64,000 nt of DNA from assembly GCA_023334545.1 (NCBI GenBank), contig JAADVB010000030.1:46714-110713 (forward strand), in the 5' to 3' direction. The translations under genes were made by a program, and so were the position numbers. A model generated the notes under the pieces. That model was not told the origin of the DNA and searched no databases. It saw only the letters and a list, made by a program, of their open reading frames with translations. Below, piece by piece: positions 3,713 through 24,822 of the stretch (positions within the stretch are counted from its first letter, which is position 1; each line of letters begins with the position of its first letter). The stretch is from Salisapilia sapeloensis CBS 127946 (lineage: Eukaryota; Protista; Oomycota).

Positions 3713-6700
3713 ATGAATTTTAACTTGTCTTCGCATGAACGCAGGTCGCCGCCCAGTCCAATGCCACAGCACAATGAAGTCGATACCAATGACCTGATAC
3801 AGCACCCAGGACTATCTTCTGGTTCCTATCCATCTCATGATCGTGAGAATACATCAAACCTCAAACGTTTCTCCAAGTCACACAGCAAACATCCTTCCCC
3901 CGTAGTCCCTGTCACACTACCTCCACTAGCAGCACTAGACCAGTATCAACAGCGACAGCTTCGCTCCTTCCTTCGCAATTTTTTATCAGATGAAAGTGGG
4001 ACCCTCTGTTCCTCCTTGGATTTGGGCCAGCACGCCATCGACTCTGGCATCGCCGTATCCGACGCTACGGTCCATGAAGTCGTCCACATGCTACCGAAAC
4101 TACAAAGCCTGTCGCTAGCAACGTGTCTGCAGATCACCGACGCCAGTCTTTGGGCGATCGCGAACAAGTGCCTATGCCTCGAGACGCTCTCTCTTTCCAA
4201 GTGCACTCGATTCTCGGAGCTGGGACTTCGTCTCGTCAGTCATGAGTGCCCTCTCCTGCATCTTGACCTCTCAGACTGTCCTCAGGTCAATGATAAGATG
4301 CTTCAGGCCATTGCTGCTGGCTGCTGGTCCTTGGAAGTGTGTCGTCTCCGGCGTTGCGTCTTGGTTTCCGACGCTGGCCTTGTCCATCTCGCCCAATGCT
4401 GTCGCCAACTGCTTGAACTAGACGTCGCTGAGTGCTGTCGAATAGGAGAATTCGGTGATAAGGCACTTGGGGAAATCGGACGGAACTGCTTTCGATTGGA
4501 AACGCTTGATCTCTTTGGCTGTCGGCATGTGCGAGACGGAGGTCTTAGATCGGTTGCTCGAGGGTGTACCAAGCTGAAAACACTACGGCTATCTGGATGC
4601 CGTGAAGTCACAGGTAGGGCGATCCGGGAGGTTGCTCGATGCTGCCAGGCCCTGCATGACCTGTCCCTCGCAGGCTGTGCCAAGACCAGCAATCAAGATT
4701 TACGTGTCCTCGCATCAAATTGCAGAGGGCTCACTGTACTGGACATCAGTGGTAGTGATTTCATCAGCTCTCAAGGTGTTAGATGTCTAGCAGAGGGTTG
4801 TTCAGAACTGACTAAGCTGACACTGGATTACTGTACTCGTATCGATGACACTGCTCTTGAACAGTTTCTCGTCGTAAATGAAAACTTGAAGAGTCAAACG
4901 ACTAATAAACTGGACGTGGCGACTCGAAAGCTTGAGTATCTTTCGGTGGTGTCGTGTCGACGCATTCGGGAACCAGGAGTCGATGTTTTGCTACAAGGCT
5001 GTCCAAACCTGACTACACTGAACGTTTCGGGATGTGATCGAGTGAGTCGAAGATTCATGCAATTTGTCATATCTCGGCTAGAGGTTGTCGAATGGGCCTC
5101 TACTTTCTTTGGTTTCCAGCCCTTACCTCATGCTGACGAAATAGTACGCCAGAGACGCCGAAAAGAAGTTGAACATCGTGCTGCAGTCCTGATCCAAGCA
5201 GCGATGAGAGGTTGCCTGGCGAGAGGAGGTCTTTGGGAGGCCAAAATGAAGTATGTCCAGACAAAGGTGCTGCCACGAATTCAAGGCATGGCGAGAGGAT
5301 TTCTCGTCCGAAGACGTATTTTTCTTGAGCAGGAAGAGAAGAAGGAGAGAGCTGCTGCACGGCAAATAAGCCAGGCGTATCAAGACTATAGACTCCGTGG
5401 GATGCTAGCACGGGCGAAACTTCGACGAAGACTTCAAATGCACTTAGACTTGACTGCGACCGAGATTCAGCGAGTATATCGAGGCCATCGAGCTCGATGC
5501 TTCTATCGTAAGATGCTAGAGGCAAAATTGATTGAGAAGCAAATGGCAGATCGACTTGGTATTCTCGAAGAGCTATGCGCTATCAAACTGCAACGAGCCT
5601 ATCGTGGTCATTGTGGTCGACATCAAGCAGCGCTGGCGAGAACTGCAAAAGAAATGGCAATTCTTCAAGCTCAACGTGAATCTGATGCTATTGCCTTTGT
5701 TCAGCGTGTGTTTCGAGGGCATCGAGGTCGAAAAGAGAAGAGAAGTCGTCTCATGCAGAAATTGTTCGAAGAACGAAAGCAAGCTGGAGCGTGTGCTCTA
5801 CAGAGAGTCGTGCGAGGCCACTGGGCTCGACAAAGAGTCCGCTTTCTTCGTCAGCAGGCATTTGAAAGGCGACGCATGGAAGCAGCGAGTACCATTCAGC
5901 GGTATTGGCGAGGATTATGCGAAAAGCACCTGGCATCCTTGCTACGTGGGCTGCTTAAACTGCATGCTCGTGAAGTTGCAGCTGCTTGTACGATTCAAAC
6001 AGCATACCGAATGCAGCGGTCAAAGGCACTTGCTGATGCAATTCGTCTTGCCCGGGAAGCGGAGCGTCGACGAAAGCACGGTGCCATTCAAATCCAGAGG
6101 TTTGTACGAGGGCATATCGCCCGATCAGAAGTGGAAGCTAGACGAGAGTTACAGCGGCTGCACGTTCAAGCGGCACCTTTGTTTGAGAAAGAAACGAGAA
6201 TCACAGAGCTGGTCCAGCAACGTAGGAAGCAAGTAGAAGACCTCACAAAGAAATGTGCTGCGAACGAACGTGATGAGCATGATTTAACGGACGAGCTTGA
6301 GAAGACGATGCAGATCAAGACCAAATATCACGACTCTAGTCGTATATCGGGTACACCACAACGGTACCTCACGCAATATCTCCAGGTCCAACTCGCCGAT
6401 CAGCTTCGTGCCAAACGAATGGAGATGGCAATGGACAACAGGTCACTAGAAACTGCTGTTGATGCATTCAACGAGGCAAATAAAAAGCTGCGTGTGGTAC
6501 GAAGGCAACTAGAGCCACTAACAGCTGGTGCATTTGAGCATGCCAAGCTAGCCCGTACTCGGCGCTTGCACAATGATATACGATGGCAGCGATACGGAGC
6601 GCTGACTATACAACGTGTCTATCGTGGATATAGACTTCGCGTAGCGCTAGCAGAGAAAGCTGAATACTGGACTGAATCATGGAATGCAAGCACACAAAGT

Positions 6701-15355: not shown

Positions 15356-18300
15356 CTACTCGTCGTGTTCCGTCTTTTGCTCCGAGACTAGTTTGCGCCG
15401 TCCTCTCTTTCGACGTGTGGCTGCGTCCTGTGTCATTTCAAAGTCAATCTCCTGCGAGTCCATCCGCACTGCGTCCCACGTGTACATGAAGATCGACCAG
15501 ACTTGATCGAGCGCACAAGTCTTTACGTCCAAAGTGATGCGAGGCAGCTCCAGTCGCTGCGTGGCATCTGCAAGCACCGTAGGTTGGCTAGCTTCCTTCT
15601 GCGGTCTGTACGTCTGACAGCGCTCGTTTTCGACGAGGTAGACAGACTTAAGGAAGACTTTAAGACCTAGCAGCATGCCGATCGGAAGCGCATGGAGACT
15701 TTGGAGGCGAGTCGAGTCACGAAGGTTGGGGGCTGTCGAGGCATAGTCGTCGATATCGACGTCCGATAGATCCGGCTCTCTCTCCTGCATGAGCTCCGGT
15801 GCGATGCCAAGGTCTGCGAATTCTTGCTTGAGCGTCTCGAGTAGGTTTCTATCAGATGCAAGAGTAAGGATTCTGGATCCGGAGGTAAGAGAAGAGGTAC
15901 GTACGATGCATGTAGCGTGACGAATCGGTTGATGTGATAAATAAGGAAGAGCGGCTCATCTTCTAGAGCATAAGGGAGGGATGAGAGCAGGTGCGTCAGG
16001 TAGGAGAGGTAGTCTAGTCTCTTGACCGCGTCCTCCGTTGTCGACGGCATTTGCTTGATGGCGAATTGGTTCAGGACTGCCTTGAGGAACAAATTGCGTT
16101 GGGAGCGAGGCGTCCGGAGACAGTTGGAGTAGAGTTGACCAAAGACGCTTCCTCTGCTTGGGTCTTCATCGACAAAGGGAGAGACGAGAGCAAAGGCTTG
16201 CGACTGGAAGGTAAAGGAGCGACGTATGCCGTCCACCGCCGCGGTTGCCAGGAGCTTGGGGAACTTGGCGTGCAGCGTACCTAGCTGGTCCTGCGCCAGC
16301 TCTCGATTGGCAACGACCTTGTCGGAGGCAAGCGCCACGAGTGTCGGGATGCATTCAAAAGGTCCGACGAGTCCTTGTGTCAGGAGTTTCGAGAGACAGC
16401 CAGCAGCCTCCGACCGGACGTGTGTAGATGGGTGGAGTGCGAGAGACAGAATGTTGTGTAGCTGCGCCTGCATGACGCTCCCGACGAGAGACGCGTCTCC
16501 ATCCCGATCTCCTGCCACTTGCTCTCGAGCGTTTCGAGCGAGTCTCTTGGGACTAGATGCGTCCGCCAGTCGTTCCTCTTCGACTTGCAGGAGGTTCTGG
16601 ATGCTCGTGAGACACTGCGTCGCGACGTCCTCCGACCCACTGCGCAGGAGCATTTCTAGTATACGATCTTCATGCGCCTCCAGCAAGAGTCTCGGTCGAG
16701 CGATGAAGAGGAAGCTGAGGCCTTGGACGGCTTTCGTAGTCCACCGGGGCGACGGACTGGACACGAGGTAGGCTGTGTAGACCTTGTAGAGCGACTGAGT
16801 AATGTTGCCAGGCTCGAGGTCGCTCCTGTCTGGCTCTAGGCCTGAGTGTTCGTCTAGGTCGATTGCCGAGACGAACTGACTGGCGCAGAAGAGCGCTCTT
16901 TGGACGGACGCATCGATGCTTGGCGTCATACTGATGGGAGTATCCGATGGCTCAAAGTTCTGGAGGCAGGCGTAGAAGACGTCGAGCATGCTGAAGAGGA
17001 GTGTGGGGGAAGTATTCGTCTTCTTTGGGAGCAGAGCGAGGCACTTGATGGCAGGTCCGACGACGCTCGGAGGTGCTTTGAAGACCAGGTCCTTCATGTC
17101 TGTCTCCAACTTGGTGACGATCCTCGGTGGAATGCGCGTCATGTCGTCGAGTACTTGCTCGAGCATGGAGATGACGACGCTCTGGACTTTGGCTTCATTC
17201 GCTTTGGACAGGTTGTCATCTCCTCCGACGTACACCATGAGCACTCGAACGTGCTTCACCAAGAGACTCGGATTCGCCTCGCTAAAGGCGCATAGAGCCA
17301 AGAGACACGCTAGGACTTGGCTGTCATGTTCGTCGACGCCTAGGAGGGAGAGTGCCGAGCCTTCTTCTAGACGCAAGAGACACTCGACAATGGCGTCGAC
17401 GAGCTGCTGCGGACGAGAGACGACGTTTGGCTTTGGAAACGAGACGTCGATACCGTTCATGACGCGGTCGAGGAGCTGTCCGAGCCACTGGATATTGCCT
17501 ACTTGGTGTGCGACGTGGACGATGGAGGTAACAACGTGAGGCACGTGGTCCGACACATCCGTGTGCTGCTCCTGAGAGCAACGAAAGGCTGCCCATGCAT
17601 TTTGAGGAGAGTCTGCGACTCTTCCTTCGGGCGACATGTAGCTAGAGATAGAGGGCGTGGATGCTTTACCAACGTCTACTCTCGTCCATCCCGGCGGCAG
17701 TTCATCGCACTTGCTGTCCGACGCGAGCGCACTAGTAGACGACAAGAGTTCGGATCGAGATAGATCGGAGCCGAACCATAGCTCTCGGAACATGTCGATG
17801 ACAAAGTCCTTGACTTCCTCCACTTCCAACGGATCTCCGAGTCTCTCCACAAGCGTCCGAGTGCACGCACTCTCCCACTTTCGAATCCTTTCCTCCGTGT
17901 CTCTCGTCAACATGGCCTGGTGGTACGTCGGAGAGAGCAAAAAGGTTCGGAAGAGCTTACAAACGCTCTTGCGGACGCTCACACCCTTGTCTCGAATGCG
18001 ATCCAGTAGCAAGTCGACGTACGACGACAAGAGCACTGGCTGCATGTTCGTATAGGTTCCTACTAGCTCCACGACGGCGTGTCGGACGGACGTGGACGAG
18101 TCGTAGAAGCACTCTCTTACGCAAGAGTGGATGCCGTCGTTGGCCATGAGCATCGGATCGACGTCGACAATGTCAGACAGGACTTTGAGCACTCGAGACC
18201 GGAGACTCGGGCCTGCAGACGACATCGGAGCCACGACATGCGACAAGAGTTTATCAAAGAGCTGGCCCAGAGGTCTGTCTAGCAGCAACTGCATGTTCAT

Positions 18301-20384
18301 CAGAGACAAGACGTCTGGCGTCGGGAGGAGGAGTCTCGATCGACTTGTTCGACTCGACTTTTTGATACTCCAGAGCGACTGCCAGAAGGAGATATTGGAA
18401 GGCGTACAGGTAGGACTCTTCTCCATGTATCGAAGCAGCAGGAGCTTTCGAGCGTCTTCGTGCACTGCATTCGACGTGAACCTACGCTCGAGGTAAACGA
18501 GAACGACATGTTTCCACGCGACGGACTCTGCGTGATCTAGTTGTCGAGGTCTGTCGTCCAGGAGGAAGCGCTCGTGCTCGTCCAGTACAGCCGATACGGT
18601 CGTGTCTCCTCGTATGTCCTCTGTCGTCTGCTTCTGGAAGGTCTTGAGTCGAGCGCAGATCTTGCCCATGGCCTGCAGCGCCGTGGCGACATCCATCGGC
18701 TCCAGTTTCTTCCCCTTGGTCGTCAAGTCGGTGTTGACGACGTGCGCAAGAGATGCGCTCAGGATCTCGAGCAAGAGTTCCGCTCCGGCCCACTCTGGTC
18801 GCGTGCACATGACGAGCAGATCGTCCGTTAGACTGTCCAAGAGTTGTCTGGTCGGAATGTCGCTCTGCTTTTGCTTCTGAAAGAGCTCCGTTAGCAACAG
18901 TCCGACGAGGTTCCGAGCGCCTGCTTGGGCCTTTCCCAGTGCTTCGACATGCCAACTCTGTCCTTGACTGTTACTCGTGCTCTCTGACGTGCTAGTGTCC
19001 TTGTCTAGAGGGATGCAGACGCAGGACTGGACGACAGCCACGAGGAGCATCGATGTCGTGTGGACCGAGAGCTCTGAGTCTGTCAGTTTGGTTTTCCTCA
19101 GACTGCGCTTGGTGGTGGGTTGATGGAGGAAGACGTGGAGGACGAGATTCTGGATCTGTGGAAGGGTGCTTGGATGCCGGACGATGACGCTGCGGAGTAG
19201 CGATAGTCCGTTCTGCTGGAGGATGCCGCTCGAAGAGTTTCTATCTAGCGCAAACAAGTCGACCACGATCCAAGCTAGACGCGTGGCCGTTCGTTCAGGC
19301 ACTTTGACGGCATCTAGGACAAGCGCTAGCCCGTCCATGGTCTCCGAGAGCATAGGTACGACTCCATCGAGAGCCCTTTTCGTTGCATTTGAAAACACTT
19401 TCGGCAGGACAGTCTTGTTATCGCTACGTTGTGTCTTTACTTGCGTCTGGAGCTTCCGAAGGGAGTCCTTGTCAATGACAGGGAGGATGATGCTCTCAAC
19501 GACCCACTTCAACGTGTCGACGCATTGGTCCAAGCTTTCGTCTGATACGACGCGAGGGTCCATGTCCGTCGTGCCCATGATCCGGAGCTTGGCATTGGCA
19601 ATGTCCAGCAACGACTTGGAGGCAGAGACGTCGTCGACGTCGATGAGGACTGTCTTGTTGGTACAAGCTGCGTTTATGGATGCAGCAAGCGTTGTGATGT
19701 TTCTTTCTAGCTGATGACGGAGGTTTTCCATGAGAGACAAGAGAAGGTCAGCGTCGAGTGTCTGGAGCGCATCCTTCTTGGAGAGATACAAGACAGCATC
19801 TTGCAGTGTCTTGGCGTCTTGAGTCGATATGTCGGTGGATGCAGACGGCGTGTCCCATCTGTACTTGGCGATGAGGTCTTGGAGTGTCGTTCCTTGGCTG
19901 TGGGGAGGCTTGGCATGCACTTGATCGTCCGCCACGCCGATAGGGGCGACAGTGTCTTTATTCGAGACACCTCGACGTTTTCTTGTGATGGGAGGAGAGA
20001 TAGTTTCCGGTCGCTTTCGCTTCGGTCTTCGTTTACCTAGAGAGCGCATGAGGACGTGGCTGACTGGATCCAATACGCGTCTACTACCTCGTGTAAATAC
20101 GGTCCGAATCGAGTGTTGCAGGTCCATCGGCATGTCTTCCACCGCAGCGGCATCCATGAACATAGTATCCCGGTCTCTACATCCATAGACATGATAAGCC
20201 TTGCAAAGAACAAAGCAGCAACTAGGTTGACGTACACGAGGTCCGTCTGTGCGCTCTGCAGCGTCGACACCAGTCGCTCTGACGTCGTTTCACTAGTGTC
20301 TGTGCCTGTAGGTATGGGTAGCACTCTCTGCGACTGAGCTCTAGTGCCTGTGTGCAGCAGCAGTTGGTAGAAAGCCGACGCCAT
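15356..20384 (-). CDS. NIPBL: Cohesin loader Nipped-B/Scc2, 3 exons
   Basis: HEAT region with PEWAGAELLLE, LRSRVLKVLSDIVDVDP, DSSTSVRHAVVELVG, DKGVSVRK, QGLVGPFECIPTLVAL and LPYALEDEPLFLIYHIN. Introns near 20236-20178 and 15900-15850 restore frame. Confidence 0.95.
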
Positions 20385-20402
20385 GGCGCTCGTGCGTGGT
20401 CT

Positions 20403-20428
20403 GGCGGGAATGACCGTTTGGCGCGAAA
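20403..20428. promoter_or_regulatory. Two E2F-type sites in the 93-bp bidirectional promoter
   Basis: GGCGGGAAT (20403-20411) and TTTGGCGCGAAA (20417-20428), the reverse complement of the classical TTTCGCGCCAAA double E2F element. Confidence 0.6.
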
Positions 20429-20477
20429 TTCGACTCGAGCATACTCAAGTCAAGTCATTTGGAGCCATCGAGAGAGG

Positions 20478-22225
20478 ATGGACCAAGCGATTGCGGCCGT
20501 CAAGGCCGGTGCGTCCGTACGGGAGGCAGCTCGCAAGTTCGACGTACCTCGAACGACGCTGCAGCGACGTCTTAAGACTGCGGATGTCAAGGTGGAGGCG
20601 AAGGAGGTGGAGGTTGCCACGGCCGGTCACAAGCGTCGGGCACCAGAGATGACGCCGAGAGTGTCCAAGGGGCCGCACAAGGCGATTAATAACAAGATTC
20701 GGATGCTCTTCACGGCAGCAGGGAATGCGATTGAAGAGAAGAGCAACGCGATGCGGAGTGCCGGAGAAGACGTGTATAAGCTCGGTCTCGGCCAGTCTCC
20801 GTTTCCAGTGCCCGAGTGCGTCGTGGATGAACTGCGGTAGACTTTTATTCGATACGATACGTGTATTCTTTACTCAGGCATGGCGACAGAGCGCATGCCG
20901 ATCGACGAGACTACTTGCCAGTGGCGGGGCTAGTGGAGCTACGAGAGGACGTTGCGTCCTGGGCGTCCTCTTCTCTCGACCTCGATCTGGACAAGGACGA
21001 CGTGCTCATCGGCCCTGGCACCAAGGAGCTCCTGTACGTCCTCCAGACAGTCTACTATGGAGACTTACTCGTCCCGAATCCGTCTTGCTCCAGCTACGGT
21101 CCACAGGCTACCATCGCCGGCAGGTAGACTCTGCCCGTGTGTCTTTTAAACTCTTCTACTGACCCTCGTGCCGCCTAGAAACCTCATTTGGCTACCTACG
21201 TACATGAAGGACCGGTGGATCCTCCGACCGGACGTCCTAGAATCCTACTGCCGCTCCGATCCTGGTACATGTCTCGTGTCGATCATGCCGACTGCTTCCT
21301 AAGAGATCGTAGACGCGCCTCGAATGCTCATGCTCAACAGTCCTTCGAACCCGACCGGATGCGCATGCACAGAGAGCGAGGTAGACTAGTTGTTCTCGTA
21401 CGATCAACCGCTTCTAACGTGCTGTAGCTGGAAGCTCTGGCAGACGTGGCGAGACGCTACCGCGTGCTGGTGATTTCAGACGAGATCTACTCGGAGCTGC
21501 ACCACTCGACCAAGCACGTGTCCATCTCTCGGTACTACCCCGAAGGTACGATCGTGTCTGGCGGCCTGAGCAAGTGGTGCGGCGCCGGTGGCTGGCGCGT
21601 CGGCTTTTGGCTGTTTCCCAAGACGCTCGACTGGCTTCGATCAAGTATGCTCGTGATGGCGTCGGAGACGTACACGTCTGTCGCTGCGCCTATTCAGTAC
21701 GCCGCTCGACGAGCGTACGCGCCCGGGTGCGTTGGTATACGCTTGGTATGGTATCGAGTCGTAGCTAACGTGGCTGACAGGTGCGACGAGCTGCAGACGT
21801 ACAAGCGCAGGTGCTGTAAGATCCTCGAGATCGTCGCGCAGTGGTGTGTGTATCAGTTACGCAAGGTGGACTTGGAAGTGCACGCGCCAGACGGCGGCTT
21901 CTACGTCTTTCCCACCTTTGCTCGTCATCGGCAGCACCTGTCCAAGGAAGGCATCTTGACGGACGAGCAGCTCTGCGAGCGCCTGCTGGAAGAGACTGGC
22001 GTGGCTGTGCTGCCAGGGTCGTCGTTTGGGTGCGACCCGAGAGATCTGCACGTGCGCGTGGCGTTCGTGGACTTCAAAGGCGAGTTGGCCATGTACTTGG
22101 TTGACAGCATGGACAGCATCACGATGGACGAACGTGACCGGTTCGTGTCGTCGGTGTGTCCCAAGCTGGATGGCGCGATGCGTCGACTAACGACATGGCT
22201 CACGTCGTTGCGTACGAGACACTAG
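20478..22225 (+). CDS. Pipsqueak/CENP-B-type HTH fused to a class I/II PLP-dependent (aspartate-aminotransferase-like) enzyme; multi-exon
   Basis: Exon 1 runs MDQAIAAVKAGASVREAARKFDVPRTTLQRRLK...GEDVYKLGLGQSPFPVP; then DYLPVAGLVELRE, GPGTKELL, LNSPSNPTG, ISDEIY, SGGLSKW..GGWRVG, PDGGFY, AVLPGSSFG and HVRVAF. Confidence 0.92.
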
Positions 22226-22369
22226 TGTCGGATGGAGGAGGCAGAGAAAAAGGGCGGGAAGCGTTTGAATTGGCCGAAAGGTAGAAGTAACCTTGCTCCG
22301 ACGAGCGATGGCTAATGACACCGAACCCAGGCCACGACTGGCTTTCTCCCCATTTGGCCTTTTCGGACC

Positions 22370-24822
22370 ATGAATACGTCTCCTCTAGCGGCAGGAGAGG
22401 ACACGACCGAGACCAAGCCCAGTCGAATGCACACGCCGAGGAACGGCGCCGAGTCCCCCGGGAGAGGGAGCACCCCGAGCTTTTTCAGGAACGCCACCAA
22501 CTCGTCTTCCCAGCGAACCAACTCGGGCGGAGGCACGGGGACGCCCAAGAGCAAGCACACCAACGCCTCCTTACGACACTTTTCCCTAGGCAGGAGCAAT
22601 AAGCACAACAATGACGCAGGACGGAGCACCAGCGGCGGAGACGCCGCCGACATACGGCACTCGCTAGGCGCCAAGAAGAACAAGAAGAAGAAGGGCGGCA
22701 AGCACGATCAAGGCGCGCCCGTCAGGTCCGGGTCCGCCGGCGCAGAAGGCAGCATCCTCTCCAACTTTTACCCCAAGCGCCACACGCGCAAGGCACTCGC
22801 CGTCACGGCAGCGCTCGCCGCCCAGGGCAGTAGCGACACGAGCTCGGATGGACTCGACGTCCTCCGGATAGAGATCCCCAAGTGGCTGTCGAGGAACGTC
22901 GACACGGACCGCGGCGACGGACACGGCATTATTAACTCGCCAGGCCCGATGGTCCAGGCTGGCCAGCGCTCGTCCACGTGGAACGGCAAAGACACGGACG
23001 ACCAGACGTCTGCGGGCGACGGCAAGCGCTACACGGTCTTCCTCGTCCACGTCCACTACCGCAACGGCCGGATCATCAAGCTCGAGAAGCGCTACAGCCA
23101 CTTTCGAGAGCTCCACAAGGTCCTTCGACGCAAGTACCCTGGCGTAAGCAAATTCTACTTTCCCCCCAAGAAGTTCTTCCTCTCGCTCTCGCTCCACGTC
23201 ATCGAGCAGCGTCGAGAAGCCATCGAGAACTACATGAACGCCGTCCTGTCGCTCAAACCGAGGCCGGACGAACTCTTAGAGTTCCTCACAGACGGACAGG
23301 ACTTTGTCGACGACGACGACGACGCAGACTTTTACGCCAACAACCCCGAGGTCGAGACCAAGCCAGAGCCAGAAGCCTCTCCTCTGGTCTCGGCGCATCA
23401 GCCTAAGCCTCCGTCTCCCCTGGCGCTCCCGACCAAGGACCCGACGACCAAAACGCCTTCGATTGAGCACCTAGAGCCCCACACGCATCGAGAGCAGATC
23501 AAACCCACGGACGAGGCGCACAAGCAGAGGCCGCCTCCACCTGCTACGCCCAGTACGCTGCCGCAGCACGCGCCGGCAGATCGACAGTCGCTCTCGCCCA
23601 CGTACGACGTGAACGCTGTGCCGGCGCCTCGATCGAGCACGAGCAGCGTGGGCGCCACTGGCGTGAACATGACGGACTTTGAGATCCTTAAGATGCTCGG
23701 GAAAGGGTCCTTTGGCAAGGTGTACATGGTGCGGGAGAAGCGGACGAACGAGATTCTGGCGATGAAAGTGCTGCGGAAGGCAGAGCTGGTGAAGCGCAAC
23801 CAGGTGCAGCACACGATGACCGAGAGGCGGATTATGAGCGCTGTAAGCCACCCGTTCGTGGTGGAGCTCCGGTACTCTTTCCAGACGCAGAGCAAGCTGG
23901 TCATGATCTCCGAGTACTGCTGCGGCGGAGAGATCTTCTTCCATTTAAAAAAGTTCCGCTCCTTCTCGGAAGCCATGGTCCGCTTCTACGCCGCGGAGCT
24001 CGTGTCTGCCATCGGACACCTCCACAGCAAGGACGTCATCTACCGAGACCTCAAGCCAGAGAACATTTTGCTGGATGAACAGGGACACGTCCAGCTGACG
24101 GACTTTGGCCTCTCCAAGATGGATTGCACCGAGTTCCTTGGCGCCAAGACATTCTGCGGCACGCCAGAGTACCTGGCGCCCGAGATGCTCATCAGCCGGC
24201 GCCGGAAGACCGAGTACGGCAAGGCAGTCGACTGGTGGTCTCTCGGCACGCTCATGTACGAGATGCTCACGGGCTGGCCGCCCTTCTTCGACCGCAACAT
24301 CGAGAAGATGTGCACCAAGATTATGAAGGCGCCGCTCAAGTTTCCGGCGCACTTTGGCCTCAGCCCCGATGTCAAGGACCTCATTAGCGGGCTCTTGGAG
24401 CGAGACCCGAACAACCGGCTCGGCTGTCGGCCGGACGCCGGCGTCGAGGACATCAAGACCCACGCCTTTTTCAACGACATCGACTGGACGGCCCTCGAGC
24501 GCCGGTCTGTCAAGCCTCCGTTCAAGCCTCGCGTCCGAGGCCCGACGGACCTCCAGAACTTTGATAAGGAATTCACCAAGGAGCTGCCGGACCAGCACTT
24601 TTTACAGGTACGTTTTTTTGGTATATATATGGACATTGCGGGAGACTGATGTGGTGTGCTCTGATTTTATAGCAAGACCGGCGGCTGTCGTCGTCCCCCA
24701 AGAACGAGTTCAACGGCTTCTCGTACACGCGCCAAGTGCGTGGGCTGCCCAAGGAGCTGCGAGGCACCGACGTGCGCTACTCTGGCGACGGCTCCGGCGT
24801 ACGCCCCCTCTCCAATTCTTAA
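22370..24822 (+). CDS. PX-domain AGC kinase (SGK3/Akt-like), 2 exons (22370-24607, 24673-24822)
   Basis: PX segment (YTVFLVHV...KRYSHFRELHKVL...FPPKKFF...IEQRREAIENYM); kinase motifs GKGSFGKV, YRDLKPEN, DFG and TFCGTPEYLAPE; hydrophobic motif EFNGFSY. Confidence 0.95.

What the first reader, a model, noticed from the sequence alone, without database searches (positions are those of the whole stretch)
20478..22225. Pipsqueak-type DNA-binding HTH fused to an intact PLP aminotransferase: a possible eukaryotic analogue of MocR/GabR regulators
Seen: the first ~33 aa closely match the HTH_psq/CENP-B-N pattern. They lie in the same uninterrupted exon as a basic NLS-like patch (GHKRRAP) and the enzyme N-terminus (KLGLGQSPFPVP), so the fusion is not a gene-model artefact. 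PLP residues are all kept (NSPSNPTG, DEIY, Schiff-base Lys in GLSKW, C-terminal Arg in HVRVAF). Known: bacterial MocR/GabR factors join a GntR winged-HTH to a fold-type-I aminotransferase domain to sense amino acids and PLP; psq HTHs occur in pogo transposases and chromatin proteins. Inference: an independently assembled metabolite-sensing transcription factor or chromatin-tethered enzyme, perhaps via transposase HTH capture. I do not know this architecture from eukaryotes.
Basis: partly seen in the sequence, partly recalled or inferred. Interest (0 to 1): 0.78.

Follow-up and report, generated by a model that had tools for sequence, protein, structure and literature searches.

The report
Oomycete HTH–aminotransferase fusion gene
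This gene joins a small DNA-binding-type domain to a complete amino-acid-converting enzyme; the fusion is real and conserved in all the water-mould (oomycete) lineages sampled, including major crop pathogens, and no paper found describes it.

Summary
Window 20478-22225 (+) is a six-exon gene for a 497-aa protein. It has a psq-type HTH (Pfam HTH_psq, E 3.2e-10), a poorly conserved linker (disordered in the orthologue model) with a small basic patch, and a complete class-I PLP aminotransferase. HTH, linker and enzyme N-terminus lie in one exon. RNA-derived contigs run from the HTH across the first splice junction into the enzyme.

The architecture is not unique to this genome. PF05225+PF00155 proteins occur in about ten oomycete genera, from Phytophthora to Saprolegnia, mostly auto-named 'HTH psq-type domain-containing protein'. 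Older models (P. sojae, P. infestans T30-4) simply miss the HTH exon. In P. sojae an 85-nt intron joins it in frame.

The HTH is under strong purifying selection (pN 0.15, pS 0.74 against P. sojae). The enzyme part keeps 91 of 93 columns invariant across 44 oomycete and bacterial homologues. Its nearest relatives outside oomycetes are HTH-less proteins about 50% identical, from bacterial genomes and metagenomes, which points to an old bacterial acquisition followed by fusion.

It is not a MocR/GabR member, since it lacks a GntR domain, but it may be a convergent analogue. DNA binding and regulation are untested, and I found no paper on the fusion.

One oddity remains: the RNA contigs keep four of the five predicted introns.

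The parts
20478..20836 (+). Exon 1 (aa 1-120): HTH, linker and first residues of the aminotransferase in one open frame
   Evidence: ORF and sequence; gene model; RNA contigs cover 20439/20476/20479 to 20835
20478..20576 (+). psq-type helix-turn-helix, aa 1-33 (three helices; helix 3 is VPRTTLQRRL)
   Evidence: Pfam HTH_psq E 3.2e-10. Invariant A4 V8 R15 A17 R25 T27 L28 Q29 R30 in 21 orthologues. pN 0.15 against pS 0.74 versus P. sojae. AF2 gives three helices at pLDDT 83; the orthologue's HTH scores 91-96
20577..20666 (+). Variable linker, aa 34-63, containing the basic patch GHKRRAP (20625-20645)
   Evidence: Mean pairwise identity among oomycetes is 0.22 and length varies widely. The orthologue's linker has pLDDT below 50. 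An xKR(S/R/P)A patch recurs in peronosporalean and pythialean orthologues
20667..20702 (+). Conserved junction segment KGPHKAINNKIR (aa 64-75), just before internal Met76 (ATG 20703)
   Evidence: KGP(R/H)K(V/A)INxK(I/V)R is conserved in nearly all the orthologues. Short annotated isoforms of other species start at the equivalent Met
20837..20889 (+). Intron 1 (53 nt, GT..AG)
   Evidence: Skipped in RNA contigs of all four runs
20890..21123 (+). Exon 2 (aminotransferase)
   Evidence: Pfam Aminotran_1_2; collinear with orthologues
21124..21178 (+). Predicted intron 2 (55 nt, GT..AG), retained in the RNA contigs; if it is read through, the frame stops at TAG 21125-21127
   Evidence: Model needed to keep the frame and match orthologues; not skipped in contigs
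21179..21264 (+). Exon 3
   Evidence: Collinear with orthologues
21265..21312 (+). Predicted intron 3 (48 nt), retained in the RNA contigs
21313..21380 (+). Exon 4 (contains NSPSNPTG)
21381..21427 (+). Predicted intron 4 (47 nt), retained in the RNA contigs
21428..21726 (+). Exon 5 (SDEIY; GLSKW with the Schiff-base Lys298 codon at 21572-21574)
   Evidence: Pfam Aminotran_1_2 E 1.8e-19 on the ORF; invariant columns kept
21727..21780 (+). Predicted intron 5 (54 nt, in frame if retained), retained in the RNA contigs
   Evidence: the same position appears to be retained in the ORF called on a Bremia-like Logan contig, P0002
21781..22225 (+). Exon 6, to stop codon TAG 22223-22225 (C-terminal small domain, Arg in HVRVAF)

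Best explanation
What it is (shown). This is the window organism's orthologue of a gene found across oomycetes. The 497-aa protein has three parts: an N-terminal single psq-type HTH, a poorly conserved and variable linker (disordered in the orthologue model), and a complete, bacterial-type class-I (fold-type-I) PLP aminotransferase. The enzyme part most likely entered the oomycete ancestor from bacteria, was fused to a eukaryotic-type psq HTH, and has been kept as a fusion ever since.

How it most likely works (inferred). Class-I aminotransferases are obligate homodimers, so the protein would carry two HTHs on flexible tethers. It could therefore bind paired DNA sites while remaining an active transaminase. 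That would make it a 'trigger enzyme' or one-component regulator that couples the state of one amino-acid/oxo-acid/PLP pool to transcription, convergent with bacterial MocR/GabR. An HTH-less isoform starting at the conserved internal Met probably supplies plain enzyme in at least some species.
For: Fusion is real:
- HTH, linker and enzyme N-terminus share one stop-free exon.
- RNA contigs run from at or just upstream of ATG 20478 (20439, 20476, 20479 in three runs) through exon 1, splice intron 1 exactly as modelled, and continue into the enzyme.
- In P. sojae an 85-nt GT..AG intron joins the upstream HTH ORF in frame to the annotated enzyme.

Conserved:
- PF05225+PF00155 proteins of 478-672 aa occur in Phytophthora, Peronospora, Hyaloperonospora, Plasmopara, Bremia, Globisporangium, Pythium, Lagenidium, Aphanomyces and Saprolegnia.
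- The window protein sits inside this clade with 100/100 support.
- The gene order aminotransferase, then PX-kinase, is shared with P. sojae and with a Bremia-like contig; P. sojae also has an F-box/MATH gene next.

HTH is functional:
- Pfam E 3.2e-10.
- pN 0.15 against a saturated pS of 0.74 versus P. sojae.
- Mean identity is 0.63 in the HTH against 0.22 in the linker.
- Five of the nine invariant residues lie in helix 3, four of them polar or basic: R25, T27, Q29, R30.
- AF2 predicts a confident three-helix bundle, pLDDT 91-96 in the orthologue.
- P. infestans psq-containing fragments bind specific DNA in protein-binding microarrays (PMC11267843).

Enzyme is intact:
- 91 of 93 columns invariant in 44 oomycete and bacterial homologues are kept; the other two are F-to-Y changes.
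- The orthologue model superposes on Thermus aspartate and prephenate aminotransferases at TM 0.91 normalised by target length.

Bacterial affinity: outside oomycetes the best hits are HTH-less proteins about 50% identical, all from bacterial genomes or metagenomes.
Against: - No experiment shows DNA binding, nuclear localisation or regulation for any member.
- The P. infestans Psq fragments that bound DNA in PMC11267843 are longer constructs from different proteins. The aminotransferase-fused HTH was not among them. From my own knowledge, Drosophila Psq needs several repeats to bind DNA.
- The basic patch is only NLS-like and is absent from the Saprolegniales.
- Full retention of catalytic residues contrasts with MocR sensors, which from my own knowledge have generally lost transaminase activity. 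The protein may therefore be first of all an enzyme.
- HTH-less isoforms are annotated in several species.
- In this organism the RNA contigs retain introns 2-5, so a fully spliced mRNA is not demonstrated here.
Confidence: 0.5

Rival explanations
1. Chromatin- or nucleus-tethered enzyme. The HTH, with the basic patch, only places an active transaminase on DNA or in the nucleus, for example to make or remove a metabolite such as 2-oxoglutarate or glutamate locally. It would not act as a gene-specific regulator.
For: All catalytic and PLP residues are kept. The HTH is a single short domain on a long flexible linker. The HTH is conserved across oomycetes.
Against: The polar and basic residues of the recognition helix are invariant, which suggests a specific conserved target and not generic DNA affinity. 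Nothing is known about localisation.
Confidence: 0.2
2. The HTH has a role other than DNA binding. It might mediate protein-protein contacts, act as an intramolecular regulator of the enzyme, or bind RNA. The Pfam class would then mislead about function.
For: The domain is a single psq repeat with no second HTH. Foldseek finds no statistically significant PDB match for the 42-aa model.
Against: The top-ranked structural neighbours, though not significant, include DNA-binding psq/CENP-B/transposase HTHs (LCoR 2cob, Dan 2elh, CENP-B 1hlv, Tc3 1u78), among other bacterial DNA-binding HTHs. The canonical psq signature (PRxTLxRR) is intact.
Confidence: 0.15
3. In this organism the main product is not the full fusion. 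Most transcripts retain introns 2-5 and would encode a 202-aa protein (HTH plus the first third of the enzyme), or would be degraded. Full-length enzyme would be made only under some conditions (regulated intron retention), or the contigs reflect an overlapping unspliced RNA.
For: In all four RNA contig sets intron 1 and both neighbour-gene introns are spliced, while introns 2-5 are kept. With intron 2 retained the frame ends at TAG 21125-21127.
Against: The downstream exons are intact, free of stops and frameshifts, and keep 91 of 93 invariant columns. This requires that they are translated. Contigs drop minority variants and carry no strand information (tool note).
Confidence: 0.1
4. Gene-model artefact: the HTH is a separate small gene or an untranslated upstream ORF, and only the plain aminotransferase is made.
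For: Older annotations (P. sojae, P. infestans T30-4, P. megakarya) start at the internal Met. Many database entries are stand-alone HTH-exon fragments.
Against: There is no stop between the HTH and the enzyme in the window's exon 1. The reading frame is maintained through a highly variable linker in more than 20 species. RNA contigs cross the junction. No uATG lies in the observed 5' leader, and ATG 20478 is in good context.
Confidence: 0.05

Closest known systems
Bacterial MocR/GabR/PdxR regulators (GntR winged-HTH + fold-type-I aminotransferase-like domain)
   Same: An N-terminal HTH, a flexible linker and a C-terminal fold-type-I PLP domain that dimerises; the overall one-component logic (PMC5320631 and PMC4944035 abstracts).
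   Different: The HTH here is psq-type, not GntR. The host is eukaryotic and the gene has introns. The enzyme domain keeps all the residues invariant in its bacterial enzyme relatives and groups with them, not with MocR. It is an independent origin.
Class Ib aspartate/prephenate/aromatic aminotransferases (Thermus AspAT 1bjw, A. thaliana PAT 6f5v, S. mutans 4my5)
   Same: Same fold, TM 0.88-0.91 normalised by target length, with the PLP lysine, Asp/Tyr and Asn motifs and the C-terminal Arg.
   Different: Only about 25% identity. No NCBIfam equivalog reaches its cut-off. The subfamily has a distinctive KLGLGQSPFP motif and its substrate is unknown. None of these enzymes has an HTH.
Phytophthora infestans Psq/CENP-B transcription factors (PITG_00015, PITG_00016, PITG_12296)
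   Same: Oomycete proteins with the HTH_psq domain. Their psq-containing fragments bind (C/T)GTAACA in protein-binding microarrays (PMC11267843).
   Different: They are different paralogues, with the helix-3 region HFAALHRR where this family has PRTTLQRR. The tested fragments are longer than the single HTH here. None carries an enzyme domain. The aminotransferase-fused HTH was not tested.
Other oomycete HTH-enzyme fusions, e.g. P. sojae Ps144890 (CENP-B HTH + short-chain dehydrogenase)
   Same: A CENP-B/psq-class HTH joined to a metabolic enzyme, conserved between P. sojae and P. ramorum (Morris et al. 2009, PMC2705460, supplement).
   Different: The enzyme partner differs. The aminotransferase fusion is not in that list, probably because the P. 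sojae model lacked the HTH exon.
Human LCoR HTH (PDB 2cob), a single psq-type HTH in a transcriptional co-regulator
   Same: Top-ranked structural neighbour of the window's HTH model: rmsd 0.8 A over 33 residues at 33% identity.
   Different: The match is not statistically significant (E 0.7) because the domain is so small. LCoR has no enzyme domain.

Membership tests
Pfam HTH_psq (PF05225) | Score above the curated gathering threshold over most of the 45-position model | tested here: met
   40 bits against 20.4, E 3.2e-10, model positions 5-39. Orthologues carry precomputed PF05225.
Pfam HTH_psq (PF05225) | Three-helix HTH fold | tested here: met
   AF2 gives helices 2-10, 14-20 and 25-41 in the window HTH at pLDDT 83; the orthologue's HTH scores 91-96. 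The Foldseek neighbours include psq/CENP-B HTHs but none is significant.
Pfam HTH_psq (PF05225) | Sequence-specific DNA binding | not testable with these tools
   The only evidence is by analogy with other P. infestans Psq proteins (PMC11267843).
Class I/II aminotransferase (PF00155, fold type I) | HMM match above threshold across the domain | tested here: met
   Exon pieces match at E 1.3e-06 and 1.8e-19. The full orthologue P0316 matches at E 2e-39.
Class I/II aminotransferase (PF00155, fold type I) | PLP and catalytic residues: Schiff-base Lys, Asp/Tyr of the SDEIY motif, Asn of NPTG, C-terminal substrate Arg | tested here: met
   K298, D267/Y270, N239 and R441 are present. 91 of 93 invariant columns are kept.
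Class I/II aminotransferase (PF00155, fold type I) | Transaminase activity and substrate | not testable with these tools
   No NCBIfam equivalog reaches its cut-off. The genomic context of one bacterial homologue is uninformative.
MocR/GabR subfamily of GntR regulators | N-terminal GntR-type winged HTH (PF00392) | tested here: not met
   The Pfam scan of exon 1 lists HTH_psq and other HTH models, with no GntR.
MocR/GabR subfamily of GntR regulators | C-terminal fold-type-I aminotransferase-like domain | tested here: met
MocR/GabR subfamily of GntR regulators | Effector- or PLP-dependent DNA binding as a dimer | not testable with these tools
   Inference only.
Oomycete HTH_psq-aminotransferase orthologous group (uncharacterised; UniProt auto-name 'HTH psq-type domain-containing protein') | Same domain order, collinear sequence including the KGPxK(V/A)IN junction, and placement inside the oomycete clade | tested here: met
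   Alignment; tree with 100/100 support; about 65% identity to all members.
Oomycete HTH_psq-aminotransferase orthologous group (uncharacterised; UniProt auto-name 'HTH psq-type domain-containing protein') | Conserved neighbourhood (PX-kinase downstream) | tested here: met
   A PX-kinase ORF follows at window 22370-24649. P. sojae and a Bremia-like contig have the same order.

The most novel reading that the evidence does not exclude
Oomycetes have a eukaryotic one-component regulator: a catalytically active, bacterially derived aminotransferase whose dimer carries two psq HTHs and binds promoters in response to its amino-acid/oxo-acid substrate or to PLP. It would be a convergent, independently built counterpart of bacterial MocR/GabR, conserved from Saprolegnia to Phytophthora. 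It may also be one example of a wider oomycete habit of attaching CENP-B/psq HTHs to metabolic enzymes.
Probability: 0.3. Interest if true: 0.8.

Novelty: new variant of a known kind. Interest (0 to 1): 0.6.

Why it matters
Direct fusions of a sequence-specific DNA-binding domain to an intact metabolic enzyme are, to my knowledge, common in bacteria and rare in eukaryotes. This one is conserved across a whole eukaryotic class that includes Phytophthora, the downy mildews, Pythium, Aphanomyces and Saprolegnia.

If the protein binds DNA, it would be a simple and tractable case of metabolite-to-transcription coupling in a eukaryote. It would also be an example of convergent evolution with MocR/GabR, assembled from a gene of bacterial type and a eukaryotic-type HTH.

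There is a practical point as well. Several reference annotations (P. sojae, P. infestans T30-4, P. megakarya) miss the HTH exon. Transcription-factor censuses and metabolic reconstructions for these pathogens therefore probably treat this gene inconsistently.

Tried and rejected
1. Length-limited word search with exon 6's ORF. It found only HTH-less models of 453 aa or less and nearly suggested that the HTH is unique to this genome. Repeating the search with the 430-aa P. sojae protein revealed the full-length fusions.
2. Big profile search with the HTH alone. Multi-repeat psq proteins dominated the top of the list. No fusion outside oomycetes and no other enzyme partner appeared among the hits inspected. 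The top-150 list cannot exclude weaker ones.
3. Word search restricted to the HTH of P0123. It returned only members of the family.
4. Bacterial gene neighbourhood, as a clue to substrate. The gene stands alone and the context is uninformative.
5. NCBIfam. No equivalog passes its cut-off. The source names 'aspartate aminotransferase' and 'asparagine--oxo-acid transaminase' are automatic and untested.
6. Foldseek on the 42-aa HTH model. The neighbours are sensible but none is significant.
7. Identifying the organism through the PX-kinase ORF. It is not on record. The organism remains 'an oomycete on a long branch'.
8. Literature searches by domain names, accession numbers and MocR in eukaryotes. 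No paper on this fusion turned up.
9. Transposon origin. The window holds no second HTH copy, and the nearest HTH relatives show no transposase domains beyond one generic Tc5-type hit. I rejected it as unsupported, not as disproved.

Full report
**Observation.** Window 20478-22225 on the + strand opens with ATG 20478 in a good initiation context (A at -3, G at +4). The first 120 codons run without a stop to a GT donor at 20837. Pfam assigns residues 1-34 to HTH_psq at E 3.2e-10, 40 bits against a 20.4-bit gathering score; CENP-B_N matches only weakly. The same exon holds GHKRRAP (aa 50-56) and KLGLGQSPFPVP (aa 101-112). The latter is the start of the aminotransferase core as judged from bacterial homologues.

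**Gene model.** Using the orthologues as a guide, I built a six-exon model: 20478-20836, 20890-21123, 21179-21264, 21313-21380, 21428-21726 and 21781-22225. The five GT..AG introns are 47-55 nt long. The model gives a 497-aa protein that is collinear with all orthologues. NSPSNPTG, SDEIY, GLSKW (Lys298 codon at 21572-21574) and HVRVAF are all present.

**Transcript evidence.** One study holds four small contig sets that match the window exactly.
- The contigs skip GT..AG or CT..AC intervals in this gene and in the divergent neighbour, so they derive from RNA.
- In three runs a single contig begins at or just upstream of the ATG (20439, 20476, 20479), covers the whole HTH exon, skips 20837-20889 exactly as modelled, and continues through the enzyme. 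In the fourth run the HTH exon lies on a separate low-depth contig.
- The HTH is therefore transcribed on the same RNA as the enzyme, and the observed leader contains no upstream ATG.
- Unexpectedly, none of the contigs skips introns 2-5, although the neighbour's two introns are removed.

Read literally, that RNA would end the frame at TAG 21125-21127. The downstream exons, however, are free of stops and frameshifts and highly conserved, so they must be translated. Dominant intron retention, an overlapping unspliced RNA, or an assembly effect cannot be told apart from contigs alone. I record this as unexplained.

**Distribution.** A first search with the last exon's ORF could only see proteins of 453 aa or less. 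It returned a 430-aa P. sojae model without an HTH, plus bacterial enzymes. Inspection of the P. sojae locus showed an upstream ORF with the same HTH (…IEAAIAAVQSGSMSLREAARKFDVPRTTLQRRV…). An 85-nt GT..AG intron (L001 5884-5968) joins it in frame to the annotated start region.

Searching again with the P. sojae protein then found full-length PF05225+PF00155 proteins of 478-672 aa in Phytophthora (many species), Peronospora, Hyaloperonospora, Plasmopara, Bremia, Globisporangium, Pythium, Lagenidium, Aphanomyces and Saprolegnia. Many carry the automatic UniProt name 'HTH psq-type domain-containing protein'. Several species have both long and short annotated products; P. nicotianae, for example, has a 554-aa protein and a 431-aa 'variant' that starts at the internal Met. 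The gene order aminotransferase, then PX-kinase, is shared between the window, P. sojae and a Bremia-like contig.

In a maximum-likelihood tree the window protein lies inside the oomycete clade with 100/100 support. It sits on a long branch, about 65% identical to every other member.

**Is the HTH maintained by selection?**
- Across 21 orthologues the HTH has nine invariant positions. Five are in helix 3, four of them polar or basic (R25, T27, Q29, R30).
- Mean pairwise identity is 0.63 in the HTH, 0.22 in the linker, 0.72 in the junction and N-terminal arm, and 0.80 in the enzyme.
- Between the window and P. sojae, synonymous sites in the HTH are saturated (pS 0.74) while pN is 0.15.
- AlphaFold2 on the Saprolegnia orthologue gives a three-helix N-terminal domain at pLDDT 91-96, a disordered linker (below 50) and a confident enzyme domain.
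- The window's own HTH, which is one residue shorter in the helix 1-2 loop and starts right at helix 1, still folds as three helices at pLDDT 83.
- Its top-ranked PDB neighbours include psq/CENP-B/transposase HTHs (LCoR 2cob, Dan 2elh, CENP-B 1hlv, Tc3 1u78), but none is significant for so small a domain.

**The enzyme part.** It keeps 91 of 93 columns that are invariant across 44 oomycete and bacterial homologues; the two exceptions are F-to-Y changes. The orthologue model superposes on Thermus aspartate aminotransferase and plant and bacterial prephenate aminotransferases at TM 0.91, normalised by target length. The closest solved sequence is a Streptococcus mutans aromatic aminotransferase (4my5, E 4e-38). 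No NCBIfam equivalog reaches its cut-off, so the substrate is unknown. Outside oomycetes the nearest proteins are about 50% identical, lack the HTH, and come from bacterial genomes and metagenomes. No other eukaryote appears among the top hits of a 5.8-billion-protein collection. The simplest reading is an old bacterial acquisition, followed by intron gain and fusion to a psq HTH. This is an inference. Morris et al. 2009 document many such bacterial-origin and fused enzymes in Phytophthora (PMC2705460).

**Origin of the HTH.** A profile of the HTH searched against 1.84 billion representatives gave 2,579 hits at E of 0.001 or better. Multi-repeat psq proteins filled the top of the list. Most of the best single-domain N-terminal hits are fragments or full copies of this same oomycete family. 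Ten other hits scanned with Pfam were plain psq, C2H2 or Tc5-type proteins, or family members. A word search limited to the HTH returned only family members. The window holds no second copy. So there is no support for a recent capture from a transposase, and none against an ancient one. In the census of PMC11267843, psq domains occur in most of the oomycetes sampled and in none of the ochrophyte stramenopiles.

**Mechanism.**
- Shown: a conserved, selected, co-transcribed fusion of a psq HTH to an intact aminotransferase.
- Inferred from established knowledge: class-I aminotransferases act as homodimers, so the fusion should present two HTHs on flexible tethers. This is the geometry that MocR/GabR regulators use to bind paired operator sites (PMC5320631, PMC4944035).
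- Supporting analogy: other P. infestans psq-containing fragments bind a defined motif, (C/T)GTAACA, in protein-binding microarrays (PMC11267843). The aminotransferase-fused HTH was not among the tested proteins.

I therefore favour, at about 0.5, a bifunctional enzyme-regulator. The rivals are pure nuclear or chromatin tethering (0.2), a role for the HTH other than DNA binding (0.15), a mostly truncated or unspliced product in this organism (0.1), and a gene-model artefact (0.05).

**Comparison with known systems.** It works like a MocR/GabR protein might, but it is not a member. The defining GntR winged HTH is absent, and the enzyme domain groups with active bacterial aminotransferases, not with MocR sensors. 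It belongs to Pfam HTH_psq and Aminotran_1_2, and to an uncharacterised oomycete orthologous group. Morris et al. list another Phytophthora fusion, a CENP-B HTH with a short-chain dehydrogenase, which hints at a broader theme.

**Novelty and verdict.** The architecture is visible in public databases under automatic names, so it is not a discovery of this window. I found no paper that describes or tests it. I rate it as a new variant of a known kind (HTH plus fold-type-I PLP domain fusions), with interest 0.6. If it is shown to be a metabolite-responsive transcription factor, it would deserve about 0.8.

Noticed in passing
window 21124-21178, 21265-21312, 21381-21427, 21727-21780: The four downstream predicted introns of the gene are kept in the RNA-derived contigs of all four runs, while intron 1 and both introns of the neighbouring gene are spliced. 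The cause could be intron retention, an overlapping unspliced RNA, or an assembly effect; the contigs cannot decide.
   Followed up: partly
window 20399-20479: RNA contigs of the divergent minus-strand neighbour (the large ORF 15667-20163, plus two spliced 5' introns at 20034-20084 and 20177-20235) end at 20399-20428. Contigs of the HTH-aminotransferase gene begin at 20439-20479. The two transcription units therefore start within about 10-80 nt of each other, which points to a very compact divergent promoter.
   Followed up: partly
L001 5544-6134 (P. sojae, JH159151.1): The reference P. sojae model PHYSODRAFT_471652 (430 aa) lacks the first exon. An HTH ORF at 5544-5883 joins it in frame through an 85-nt intron (5884-5968). 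The P. infestans T30-4 (427 aa) and P. megakarya (421 aa) models are truncated in the same way.
   Followed up: yes
window 20667-20702, compared with L001 5880-5980: The phase-1 intron that follows the (K/Q)G codons of the conserved junction in P. sojae, and by their read-through fragments in several other oomycetes, is absent from the window gene. This looks like intron loss, or gain in the other lineage. The window HTH also lacks the roughly 8 residues that precede helix 1 in other species and is one residue shorter in the helix 1-2 loop.
   Followed up: partly
window 22226-22700: The RNA contigs run without a break from the aminotransferase gene across the 144-nt spacer into the PX-domain protein kinase gene (22370-24649). 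The 3' and 5' UTRs may overlap, or there may be read-through.
   Followed up: no
window 20478-24649; L001 6001-13794; L002 136-3489: The gene order aminotransferase, then PX-kinase, is conserved between the window, P. sojae and a Bremia-like Logan contig, and P. sojae has an F-box/MATH gene next. The upstream neighbours differ: a kinesin in P. sojae, a large Nipped-B-like ORF here.
   Followed up: partly
PMC2705460, supplementary table 1: Morris et al. [quoted passage not shown] HTH-enzyme fusions may be a recurring theme in oomycetes.
   Followed up: no
tree: The window protein is about 65% identical to peronosporalean and saprolegnialean orthologues alike and sits on a long branch (0.49) at an unresolved position within the oomycete clade. 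The source organism is therefore a divergent or fast-evolving oomycete. It could not be identified, because its PX-kinase is not on record.
   Followed up: partly
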